From Azolla caroliniana (lineage: Eukaryota; Plantae; Polypodiophyta): a DNA stretch of 64,000 nt. The position numbers and the translations under genes were made by a program. The stretch covers positions 35,154,001 through 35,218,000 of the forward strand of contig JBHGNT010000001.1 of the NCBI GenBank assembly GCA_043228905.1. Direction: 5' to 3'. The notes beneath the pieces were generated by a model. That model did not search any database. It saw nothing but the letters and a program-made list of their open reading frames with translations, and was not told the origin of the DNA. Shown here in pieces: positions 42,268 to 45,200 of this stretch; position 1 is the first letter of the stretch, and every line of letters begins with the position of its first letter.

Positions 42268-45200
42268 ATGGCTCAGCAAGAGGAACAGGGGACCCCCAAG
42301 TGGACTCAGAAGGTCGAGGATTTGGTCGATGACGGTGAAACCGGAGAAGCTCAGAAACTTCTAGAGGGAATCGTGGCCGATCTCGAGCAGAGGGAAGCCT
42401 CCTCTTCTAACCTAACCCTCTCTGCAGCTCTTTTTGACCTAGCTTCTCTCTACAACTCTCAAGGTCTCTCCATTAAAGCTGATTCGTGCCTTTCCTCTGC
42501 CCTCCTTATAAAAAAGAGAGCAGAAGCCCTTGCTGATCTCAGGTACTTCTCCTCTTCTTCGTATTATTAACGTTTCGATCAATTATCTTATCAAACTAGG
42601 GTTTTTATGGTATCGGAACTTGTTTCTGTTTTTCTTATTTCTTCTAGCGGAAGATATATGCTTATATTACATACTGTTTTCAAGTTAGGGTTTAGGTCAT
42701 AACCCTATCAAGTCAGGGTATCAGGTACTTGTTTTTCTTGTTTTTCTTGTTCTTCCTTGTTTCTGTTTCTTTTTTGCTTTTTGAGGTCAGGTTATGCATG
42801 GTTGAAGCTCATCTTGGTAAGTTAAGATTATGCATGGTTGAAGCTCATCTTGGTATCAGAGACTTGTTTTGTCTCTCTTTATTTTCTTTCTTTTATGGTC
42901 AGTAAGTGTGGTTTAGATATTCGATTCCCTTTTCTTCTTCATCAAGGTCAGGCGTCCACGGTTTAGAGCACCTGATGAAATTTTGGTTTTCAATGGTATC
43001 ACGAACTTCTTTTTGTCTTTCTTCTTTCTTCTTCCCTTCTTTTGAGCTCAGGTTATGCGTATATGGTTTAGAATCTAGATGATCAATCTATCAACGCCTA
43101 AGTCTTCTATTGTATCAGGGTGATAGATTCTCCATCAGTAGATTGTGGAATTAGAGCTAAAGAAGAGGAGAATAATTCTATAGACGTGCAAGGAGAGGAG
43201 AACAATTCTATAGATGTGCAAGGAAGGCATCCGGAATCATCCGAGTCTGGATCAACTTGTGAAGAAGGTAAAATTTCCATCTAAAGCATTGTTTTCTATT
43301 TATTCTTTTTTATCACCTTACCTTCTTTATCAGTGAGTCAAAGGCATTAAAGTATGGGTCCTATGGAAAAAACTATTTAATGACCATTTATGCTTACCCT
43401 TCAGAAAACCTGCAAGATTTAACAATCAACTGAGAAATTTAATGCTTTTCCTGCATTCCAATTCAGTAGATGCATTGAAGGTACATTTCGTGAACTCAAG
43501 TTTGTTATGTAGAATTACTATTATGAAGCTGCTAAATCCCGAGATATAGATGTTACAATCATATCTCACTTATGATAGGAAATCTAAATAAAATATACAA
43601 TTGCTCCTCTGCCTATGCCTTTCTCTTTCATACTAAATCCCAAGATATAGATGTGACAATCATATTTCACTTATTATGACCGGAATTCTGAATAAAATGT
43701 TCAATAGGTCCTCCCGCCTATGCTTTCTTCTCTTCAATGGATTGTGAACAGTGAGGATATGAATTGGTAGCAGATGCACAGAGCTTTGCAAGTAAATGAT
43801 GTGAGATACTTCTCTCTGGCTGTCTCTCACGATGCGAAGAAAGCTTCTATGACCATATGAAACATCTGGATATGATGCATGGAAATTTTTGTCTCTATGG
43901 AGCCAACTAAAAATTCCTTCTAAAAAGCTCAGTGTCAGAAGGTTAAGGGAGTTATGACCTGATGAAAGGGCAAACCAGTGAACAGTGGCCGTAACTATAA
44001 CAGTCCTAAAGTAATGAAATTCCTTGTTGGGTAAGTTCCTACCTGCATGAAATGCATAACGATTGTGTCTCAGAGAAAGACAATGTGAAATATACATGTC
44101 TGTGAAGATGCGGACTACCCACACCTGGACAAAAACCCTATGAAGCTTCACTGTTCCCTGGGATTGTCATTGAGCTATTCTTGTGCAGCTTAGGTGAAAG
44201 GCAAAGAGGGCCCCTCTCCGGAGAGGCCTGAGCAAAAAAAATCCTTCTAAAAAGCTATGGAGGGTGACATCCTGTATGCAACATATGTTGTCAATGTTGG
44301 TAACATGGATATGAGCAATTTGATGCTAGTATGAACTATATCTACAGAAAAATAATGCAGGTTAAGGGAGATGTCTAAAAATGATAACTTTTTTCAATGT
44401 GATGGATGAGGATAACATAGTTTAAAGAAGAGCTGATTATGTTTTTGAAACATAATTATCTGATAATGTTGTGACTAACCCGATAGTAATTATAAAGATA
44501 TAAAATAAAACAGCGTCACTATCACCATAAATAAAATATAATTTAGGAATTATTAAAGAAGAAATTGTTTGTTCATTATTGTGACAACTGTGTAATTAAC
44601 GTAGTCGAAATGGTAACCATACAAATCTATAAAATAGAACAGCATTGCAATAGGTTATAACAAAATTGGAAGAATTTAGTATCTGTACAACTTGTCTCTT
44701 AGTATCCATAAACTGTTCTTTTGTTAGGCAAAAACCATGCTTCTGATTTGTTTCTTATATACACTCGTTTGTTTTTTCTATAATGATCACTCCTTAAATA
44801 ACAGCTCATTCAAATGTGACAATGCAGAGTGGGAAACTGCTCTATCTGAAGGTTTGTTAAAGTTGGGTACCCTGTCTACATCATCAAAAACTGCAACTGA
44901 GGTTTCCACACATGATCGGAGTACATACAAGCAACGTGGAAGAGGGGCTTTTACCTATGGAGAGATGGGCATGCGTTGTGATCGGCCAGTTTTGAGCCCT
45001 AATGAAAGCCTTGATATGGAAGATGAAAGTGACATGGGAGATGCTAAAGGTAAGTAGTTTTTAGAGATTTTTAAAGCAATGGGAAAAGTATTAATTTTCT
45101 TTGTGTTTTGTAGCTGTTTGTGGAGTTCGGCACGTGCTGATGGTCACTTTTTCACCGAAGGTTACAACGAAAGATTTGGAAAACCTTTTTGAGGCTTTTG

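What the first reader, a model, noticed from the sequence alone, without database searches (positions are those of the whole stretch)
43904..44256. Plastid 23S rRNA fragment with retroposition hallmarks: TSD, A-run and LINE-type target site
Seen: a ~304-bp plastid-type 23S piece (43930-44233) in rRNA-sense orientation, followed by A8 (44234-44241). It is bracketed by a direct repeat, aaaaattccttctaaaaagct (43909-43929) and aaaaaatccttctaaaaagct (44236-44256), with a 15-bp identical core and 20/21 overall. The left junction CAACT|AAAA is identical to that of the LINE at 19793 (cacaact|aaaacatttga) and fits the L1 endonuclease 5'-TTTT/A preference. Established: NUPTs are generally attributed to DNA capture at breaks without long TSDs; plastid RNA decay intermediates are oligo-adenylated; L1 machinery retroposes other RNAs in trans. 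Inference: RNA-mediated plastid-to-nucleus transfer by target-primed reverse transcription, or one copy of an undescribed plastid-rRNA-derived SINE-like family. Caveat: only 2-3 A's lie outside the TSD, so the tail evidence is modest.
Basis: partly seen in the sequence, partly recalled or inferred. Interest (0 to 1): 0.8.

Follow-up and report, generated by a model that had tools for sequence, protein, structure and literature searches.

The report
Old plastid rRNA insert with duplication
A decayed 305-base piece of chloroplast 23S ribosomal RNA sequence sits in an intron of a fern nuclear gene, flanked by a real 21-base duplication at a site like those cut by LINE retroelements, but the sequence cannot show whether it arrived as RNA or as DNA.

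Summary
Window 43927/43930-44233 is a decayed plastid-type 23S piece (E. coli 1835/1838-2160). A8 follows it, and a 20/21 direct repeat brackets it (43909-43929 and 44236-44256). The repeat has sharp edges, and chance gives about 3 in 100,000. The junction CAACT|AAAA occurs only twice in the window. The other occurrence is the left junction of a true poly(A) retroposed element with an 11-bp duplication.

New context:
- The insert lies in an intron of a conserved gene with an RNA_bind domain.
- A contig from a related genome (6% diverged) carries the same insert, A8 and both repeat copies. A near-identical contig shows the insert's 3' part, A8 and the right copy. The insert is therefore old, and no empty site was found.
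- A second 23S piece (E. coli about 2473-2651) lies 3.5 kb downstream at 47741-47919. It has the same strand, order and decay, but no duplication and no A-run.
- No other copies were found, so a SINE family is not supported.

In rice, 13% of organelle inserts have duplications over 5 bp, so the duplication alone is not RNA evidence. Only 2-3 A's need be non-templated.

My odds: DNA captured at a staggered, LINE-like break about 0.5; retroposed plastid rRNA about 0.3. This is an ordinary NUPT with an unusual, unresolved junction.

The parts
43909..43929 (+). Left copy of the 21-nt direct repeat (target-site duplication), AAAAATTCCTTCTAAAAAGCT, preceded by CAACT
   Evidence: It is identical in the related contig L027.
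43930..44233 (+). Plastid-type 23S rRNA piece 1, in rRNA sense, E. coli 1838-2160. The homology can be read from 43927 (= G1835) if the GCT that ends the repeat is counted as 2-3 nt of microhomology.
   Evidence: Decay at sites invariant in 9 plastid references is 38/260, of which 25 are C>T or G>A, and 18 nt are deleted.
44234..44241 (+). A8 run at the 3' end of the piece. Its last 6 bases overlap the right repeat copy, so only 2-3 A's are extra.
   Evidence: The same A8 is present in L026 and L027.
44236..44256 (+). Right copy of the direct repeat, AAAAAATCCTTCTAAAAAGCT
   Evidence: It is present in L026 (identical) and in L027 (1 change).
47741..47919 (+). Plastid-type 23S rRNA piece 2, same strand and collinear, E. 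coli about 2473/2490-2651. It has no flanking direct repeat and no A-run.
   Evidence: Decay is 25/143 at invariant sites.
42268..42543 (+). Exon 1 of the host gene (TPR-like N-terminus; matches residues 4-82 of the 355-aa homologue P0083)
44776..46063 (+). 3' exons of the same host gene: about 44776-45054, 45113-45276 (RNA_bind/RRM-like), about 45417-45514, and 45857-46063 with the stop codon. Piece 1 therefore lies in the intron upstream, and piece 2 lies 1.7 kb past the stop.
19793..23513 (+). Comparison element: a 3.7-kb retroposed element with an A16 tail (23491-23506) and a perfect 11-bp duplication AAAACATTTGA (19793-19803 and 23503-23513) at the same CAACT|AAAA junction

Best explanation
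Piece 1 is an old, neutrally decaying nuclear insert of plastid 23S sequence (a NUPT). It entered an intron of a conserved host gene at a staggered break, and filling in the 21-nt stagger produced the flanking duplication. The break has the sequence and geometry of a LINE endonuclease nick (T|AAAAA on the strand where the insert is sense), so a LINE enzyme probably made the first cut. The captured molecule was most likely a fragment of plastid DNA joined by end-joining or template switching, in the same episode that put a second fragment of the same 23S region 3.5 kb downstream. Shown: the plastid origin, the duplication, the site motif, the age, the intron position, the second piece and the absence of other copies. 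Inferred: who made the break, and that the captured molecule was DNA.
For: The duplication is real and sharply bounded. The site CAACT|AAAA is shared only with a true poly(A) retroposed element. DNA-mediated organelle inserts with duplications are documented: 13% over 5 bp and 4% over 20 bp in rice, where no spliced forms were found (PMC12129026). NUPTs commonly occur as linked collinear clusters (PMC7037861). A second 23S piece lies 3.5 kb away with the same strand, order and decay (17.5% against 14.6%) but without a duplication or A-run. At most 2-3 A's are non-templated. The 2-3 nt GC(Y) microhomology at the 5' junction fits end-joining. Neither end of the piece is a known plastid rRNA end. 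H69 (E. coli 1911-1917), which carries an RT-blocking modified base in E. coli (my own knowledge), is copied without error.
Against: The insert is in rRNA sense relative to the A-run, as target-primed reverse transcription predicts, although chance gives this half the time. The T|AAAAA start of the duplication is rare by chance (0.1% of positions). It is the natural primer site for reverse transcription of an A-tailed RNA, and DNA capture at a LINE nick is not a documented route for NUPTs. The DNA between the two pieces holds ancestral exons. The two pieces are therefore two integration sites, which needs two breaks in one episode or a coincidence. Earlier unchecked notes of this scan report several RT-mediated captures of cytosolic rRNA in this genome.
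Confidence: 0.5

Rival explanations
1. RNA-mediated transfer. An oligoadenylated decay fragment of plastid 23S rRNA, lying within the 1.1-kb hidden-break fragment C, reached the nucleus. A resident LINE reverse-transcribed it at a T|AAAAA nick by target-primed reverse transcription, giving a 5'-truncated sense copy, a short A-tail and a 21-bp duplication.
For: The duplication is real. It starts with A5 after a T, on the strand where the insert is sense, and abuts the insert's 3' end. The same 9-mer junction is found at a true poly(A) retroposed element, and at no other place in 128 kb. Microhomology at the 5' junction is usual for truncated LINE-type inserts (established knowledge). Both 23S pieces fall in hidden-break fragment C, and rRNA dominates plastid RNA, so two rRNA-derived inserts are less of a coincidence under an RNA model. 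A published analogue exists: mitochondrial rRNA and mRNA copies with duplications and poly(A) in human (PMC11727581).
Against: The tail may be only 2-3 A's, and the T/A difference between the repeat copies predates the split from L027. The 3' end is internal to the rRNA, with no known cleavage or polyadenylation site there. rRNA can carry no RNA-specific mark such as splicing or editing. Piece 2 has no hallmarks. No further copies were found. Studies in rice and tobacco find DNA-mediated transfer.
Confidence: 0.3
2. Secondary nuclear event. Piece 1 is a copy (retroposed or duplicated) of an already decayed nuclear NUPT, for example a once longer insert at the piece 2 site read through from the host gene. 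On this reading the duplication dates a nucleus-to-nucleus move, not the exit from the plastid.
For: The repeat copies differ at 1 of 21 positions. About 3-4.5 differences are expected if the repeat is as old as the decay of the insert (P about 0.06-0.2). Piece 2 lies downstream of the host gene, in sense orientation.
Against: The deficit of differences is not significant, and the AT-rich repeat has no CpG. The two pieces do not overlap in 23S coordinates, so shared decay cannot be tested. No donor copy was seen.
Confidence: 0.1
3. The 21-mer is not target DNA. It is a decayed continuation of the plastid sequence (E. coli 2161-2192, GAGATACCACTCTGGAAGAGCT), present twice because slightly more than one unit of a plastid fragment was inserted or duplicated.
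For: A transition-tolerant alignment of the right copy to the plastid continuation scores above random (p about 0.03-0.04). The left context GAGCCAACT resembles plastid GAGCCACCA.
Against: The collinear site is not the best match of the 21-mer within 23S. It would need 7 of 11 G/C sites changed, against 22% in the confirmed piece. The sequences upstream of the two copies are unrelated.
Confidence: 0.05
4. One copy of a multi-copy SINE-like family derived from plastid rRNA.
For: None beyond the duplication and the A-run. Earlier unchecked notes report other rRNA-derived elements in this genome.
Against: Of 80 ORF hits to the antisense ORF that spans the insert and its flank, only one covers the flank, and it is the orthologue; the rest match the 23S part alone. 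The window holds no other copy. The L011/L030 contigs carry an unrelated, young 23S insert with a different 5' end. The test is limited to copies that keep an ORF and to the assemblies indexed.
Confidence: 0.03

Closest known systems
NUPTs/NORGs with target-site duplications (Oryza, Genome Res 2025, PMC12129026)
   Same: An organelle-derived insert in nuclear DNA, with C>T/G>A decay, a flanking duplication of about 20 bp, short junction microhomology, and membership of a local cluster of collinear pieces.
   Different: The rice cases are ascribed to replication template switching, and the passages I read mention no LINE-type target motif. Here the duplication begins T|AAAAA, abuts the rRNA-sense 3' end, and repeats the junction of a resident poly(A) retroposed element.
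L1-mediated retrocopies of mitochondrial rRNA/mRNA proposed in human (retroSeeker, PMC11727581)
   Same: Organelle rRNA sequence in the nucleus, in sense orientation, with a target-site duplication and a 3' A-run at an L1-type cleavage motif.
   Different: Those copies have standard poly(A) tails. Here only 2-3 to 8 A's are present, the source is the plastid, the host is a fern, and there is a single locus.
Processed pseudogenes and LINE-dependent SINEs, including rRNA-derived SINEs (5S-derived SINE3, 28S-derived SINE28; my own knowledge)
   Same: A duplication of 10-20 bp, an A-rich 3' end and 5' truncation.
   Different: There is no family, no internal promoter or LINE-derived tail was seen, and the 3' end is not a natural transcript end.
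Fragmented primary NUPT insertions ('loose clusters', review PMC7037861)
   Same: Two collinear, co-oriented pieces of one plastid region a few kb apart, with equal decay.
   Different: The DNA between them is not a later transposon insert. It holds ancestral exons of a conserved host gene, so the pieces mark two integration sites.

Membership tests
NUPT (nuclear insert of plastid sequence) | Sequence homologous to the plastid genome | tested here: met
   Rfam bacterial LSU at 67 bits. Identity to land-plant plastid 23S contigs over about 331 nt is 75-80%. The reference loci carry the order 23S, 5S, trnR-ACG, trnN-GUU.
NUPT (nuclear insert of plastid sequence) | Embedded in nuclear DNA | tested here: met
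   The piece lies in an intron of a spliced host gene. An LRR receptor kinase gene and LINE remnants lie nearby. The same context is found in two independent assemblies.
NUPT (nuclear insert of plastid sequence) | Neutral decay dominated by C>T/G>A | tested here: met
   25 of 38 changes are C>T or G>A; 22% of GC sites changed against 5.8% of AT sites. Divergence between the two genomes is 9% in the insert against 6.6-6.9% in the flanks.
LINE-mediated retrocopy (target-primed reverse transcription) | Target-site duplication of about 5-20 bp flanking the insert | tested here: met
   A 20/21 repeat with sharp edges.
LINE-mediated retrocopy (target-primed reverse transcription) | First-strand nick at a TTTT/A-type site, with the duplication starting in A's next to the 3' end | tested here: met
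   ACT|AAAAA, the same 9-mer as at the resident poly(A) element and unique to these two sites.
LINE-mediated retrocopy (target-primed reverse transcription) | Non-templated 3' poly(A) tail | tested here: inconclusive
   Six bases of the A8 run overlap the duplication. Between 2 and 8 A's could be tail, depending on where the duplication is taken to start.
LINE-mediated retrocopy (target-primed reverse transcription) | Ends or marks that only an RNA would have (mature or processed 3' end, splicing, editing) | tested here: not met
   The 3' end is at E. coli 2160 and the 5' end at 1835/1838, both internal to the rRNA. The hidden break lies in H63, not here. rRNA has no introns or editing to test. 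A polyadenylated decay end at this position is not testable with these tools.
SINE-like repeat family | Many dispersed copies that share ends and diagnostic changes | tested here: not met
   Only the orthologous locus was found. The test is limited to ORF-bearing copies in the indexed assemblies; the full genome was not searchable.
Fragmented single primary NUPT | The DNA between collinear pieces is later-inserted, non-ancestral DNA | tested here: not met
   The DNA between the pieces carries exons that match one 355-aa homologue in order.

The most novel reading that the evidence does not exclude
A resident LINE reverse-transcribed an oligoadenylated decay fragment of plastid 23S rRNA into a nuclear intron. 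This would be the first sequence-level case of RNA-mediated, LINE-dependent plastid-to-nucleus transfer in a plant, in a fern genome where RT-mediated capture of rRNAs may be common.
Probability: 0.3. Interest if true: 0.7.

Novelty: new member of a known kind. Interest (0 to 1): 0.38.

Why it matters
Whether organelle sequences ever reach the nucleus through RNA is an old question. For plastids the answer so far is 'DNA only'. This locus shows that a plastid rRNA insert can carry the whole junction signature of LINE-type integration. That makes the question testable by a census in this fern: strand, ends, tails, duplications and target motifs of all plastid-derived inserts. On its own the locus is one old, neutral NUPT in an intron with no sign of function. 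Its signature has a documented DNA-level explanation.

Tried and rejected
1. Extending the repeat. The 60 nt upstream of the two copies are unrelated, so this is not a tandem duplication of a longer unit.
2. Reading the 21-mer as a decayed continuation of the plastid sequence. The match is marginal (p about 0.03) and is not the best site in 23S. I kept it as a 5% rival.
3. One primary insertion later split by foreign DNA. Rejected, because the DNA between the pieces holds ancestral exons and no sequence there is repeated elsewhere in the window.
4. The 5' end as the plastid hidden break. Rejected, because the break is in H63, about 100 nt upstream.
5. Empty-site search. L027 (6% diverged) is filled across both junctions, and the near-identical L026, which starts inside the insert, shows its 3' part, A8 and the right repeat copy. 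The exon-ORF search gave only one cluster. Exact-ORF look-ups near piece 2 and for exon 1 were not on record. P0082 gave a 684-bp contig. The P0083 locus was too long to be returned.
6. L011/L030, a nuclear-like contig with a 23S piece. It is unrelated and young, and the contigs end inside the piece.
7. Other plastid rRNA-operon pieces in the window. None were found; the extra hits are simple repeats. Only about 10-15 kb of plastome around 23S was available as reference.
8. A possible third partial copy of the repeat core (ATTCCTCTA, 14 nt after piece 2). I judged it chance, at roughly 1%, given several looks.
9. The spliced host-gene model was not joined. Exons were searched one by one, by reference.

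Full report
**What is there**

Window 43927-44052 matches the Rfam bacterial LSU rRNA model (positions 1861-1997, 67 bits). I fetched 25 metagenome contigs with a 27-nt pattern taken from the window. Several of them are land-plant plastid rRNA operons; L018, for example, has the order 23S, 5S, trnR-ACG, trnN-GUU. Against these contigs the homology runs from 43927 to 44233/44234 on the + strand, in rRNA sense. Identity is 75-80%, and about 24 nt are deleted in the window. Aligned through E. coli rrlH, the piece spans 23S positions 1835/1838 to 2160, which is H67/68 through the L1 stalk.

At sites invariant in nine plastid references, 38 of 260 are changed. Of these, 25 are C>T or G>A. GC sites are changed at 22% and AT sites at 5.8%. 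This is the usual decay pattern of a methylated nuclear insert.

**The repeat and the A-run**

A8 lies at 44234-44241. The 21-nt repeat at 43909-43929 and 44236-44256 is 20/21 with a 15-nt identical core. The sequences just outside the two copies are unrelated, so this is a discrete duplication. Random placements of a 306-nt insert give such a repeat in 6 of 200,000 trials.

The duplication begins ACT|AAAAA on the strand where the insert is sense. TAAAAA occurs at 0.095% of positions. CAACTAAAA occurs only twice on both strands of the window, at 43904 and 19788. At 19793 it is the left junction of a 3.7-kb element that ends in A16 and has a perfect 11-bp duplication AAAACATTTGA. I found no reverse transcriptase domain in that element, so it is a poly(A) retroposed element rather than a shown LINE. 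A LINE remnant with a zf-RVT domain lies next to it on the other strand.

1. The window is plant nuclear DNA. It carries an LRR receptor kinase gene at 33.4-38 kb. Earlier notes of this scan call the genome a fern; I did not test that.

2. The insert lies in an intron of a conserved gene. A 355-aa homologue (P0083, NCBI GCA_014529385.2, Pfam RNA_bind) matches the window in order:
   - residues 4-82 at 42289-42525
   - residues 121-172 at 44827-44985
   - residues 207-255 at 45122-45271
   - residues 256 to about 287 at 45417-45514
   - residues 288-354 at 45857-46057, followed by the stop codon

   Exons were searched one by one, by reference. I did not build or search a joined model.

3. Two independent ENA assemblies hold the locus.
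   - L026 (1,114 bp, near-identical) covers 44092-45182.
   - L027 (2,852 bp, 6.5% substitutions) covers 42367-45199.
   - L027 carries the whole 23S piece with its shared deletions, the A8 and both repeat copies. L026 starts inside the piece and shows its 3' part, the A8 and the right repeat copy.
   - In L027 the left copy is identical to the window and the right copy has one change.
   - The T/A difference between the two repeat copies is present in L027 as well as the window, so it predates their split.
   - The insert diverges slightly faster than its flanks (9% against 6.6-6.9%), so it is not under constraint.
   - It is roughly three times older than the split. No empty site was obtained.

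4. A second 23S piece lies at 47741-47919.
   - It is on the same strand and collinear, at E. coli about 2473/2490-2651.
   - Its decay is similar, at 25/143.
   - It has no flanking direct repeat and no A-run.
   - A perfect 201-bp tandem duplication abuts its left edge.
   - The DNA between the two pieces holds ancestral exons. The pieces therefore mark two integration sites, not one insertion split by later DNA.

5. No family was found. I searched the 163-aa antisense ORF that spans the insert and its left flank against 5.8 billion proteins. Only one hit covers the flank (P0001 = L027). The other 79 match the 23S part alone. The window holds no other copy of the insert or its flanks.

**Mechanism**

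The duplication shows integration at a staggered break. Its T|AAAAA start, in the right orientation and identical to the junction of a resident poly(A) element, makes a LINE endonuclease nick the most likely source of that break.

What was joined there is not settled.

For RNA (target-primed reverse transcription):
- The insert is in sense orientation.
- The A-run lies at the 3' end.
- Microhomology at the 5' junction is usual for truncated LINE-type inserts.
- Both pieces fall in the abundant 1.1-kb hidden-break fragment of plastid 23S.
- A human analogue has been published for mitochondrial RNAs (PMC11727581).

Against RNA, or neutral:
- Only 2-3 A's need be non-templated.
- Both ends are internal to the rRNA.
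- rRNA offers no splicing or editing mark.
- Piece 2 has no hallmarks.
- DNA-mediated organelle inserts carry duplications over 5 bp in 13% of rice cases and over 20 bp in 4%. No spliced forms were seen there (PMC12129026).
- Clustered, collinear pieces are typical of DNA-derived NUPTs (PMC7037861).

The repeat copies differ less than the decay of the insert predicts: 1 difference seen against about 3-4.5 expected, P about 0.06-0.2. This leaves some room for a later nucleus-to-nucleus copy.

My odds:
| Reading | Odds |
|---|---|
| Plastid DNA captured at a staggered, probably LINE-made break | about 0.5 |
| Retroposition of an oligoadenylated plastid rRNA fragment | about 0.3 |
| Secondary nuclear copy | about 0.1 |
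| Repeat derived from plastid sequence | about 0.05 |
| SINE family | about 0.03 |

**Verdict**

The object is a member of a known kind (NUPT) with an unusual junction. Its value is as a lead for a genome-wide census, which I could not run here.

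Noticed in passing
window 47741-47919: A second plastid 23S piece (E. coli about 2473/2490-2651). It is on the same strand, collinear and of similar decay to the piece under study, and lies 1.7 kb past the host gene's stop codon. It has no flanking repeat or A-run.
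   Followed up: yes
window 47340-47540 and 47541-47741: A 201-bp tandem duplication, reported as 100% identical, whose right edge abuts the start of 23S piece 2. It is either much younger than the insert or an assembly artefact.
   Followed up: partly
window 19793-23513: A 3.7-kb retroposed element with an A16 tail and a perfect 11-bp target duplication AAAACATTTGA. Its ORFs (up to 368 aa) have no Pfam reverse transcriptase or endonuclease hit, so its identity (non-autonomous element or processed gene copy) is open.
   Followed up: partly
window 42268-46063: A conserved plant gene of about 355 aa with a TPR-like N-terminus and a PARN-type RNA_bind/RRM-like domain. Its exon at 44779-45054 diverges from the L027 copy almost as fast as the introns do (5.8% against 6.6-6.9%).
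   Followed up: partly
window 42777-42848, 43160-43219, 43532-43731, 46513-47029; L026 about 350-380: The gene's introns and 3' flank hold many small tandem duplications (36, 30, 101-105 and 119-131 bp). L026 has a further 30-bp tandem duplication that is absent from the window. The region appears prone to local duplication.
   Followed up: no
L011 979-1019 (ENA ERZ1034427) and L030 (ENA ERZ27227308): An unrelated nuclear-like contig, from the same two sample series that hold the window's locus, carries a young 23S-like piece (95% identical to plastid) starting at about E. coli 2060. Both assemblies end 40 nt into it, so its 3' end could not be seen.
   Followed up: partly
window 33463-37952: An LRR receptor-like kinase gene in three long ORFs (LRRs, LRR with kinase N-lobe, kinase C-lobe), apparently intact.
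   Followed up: no
window 47920-47945: Fourteen nt after piece 2, ATTCCTCTA resembles the core of the 21-nt repeat (ATTCCTTCTA). I judged it chance, at roughly 1%.
   Followed up: partly
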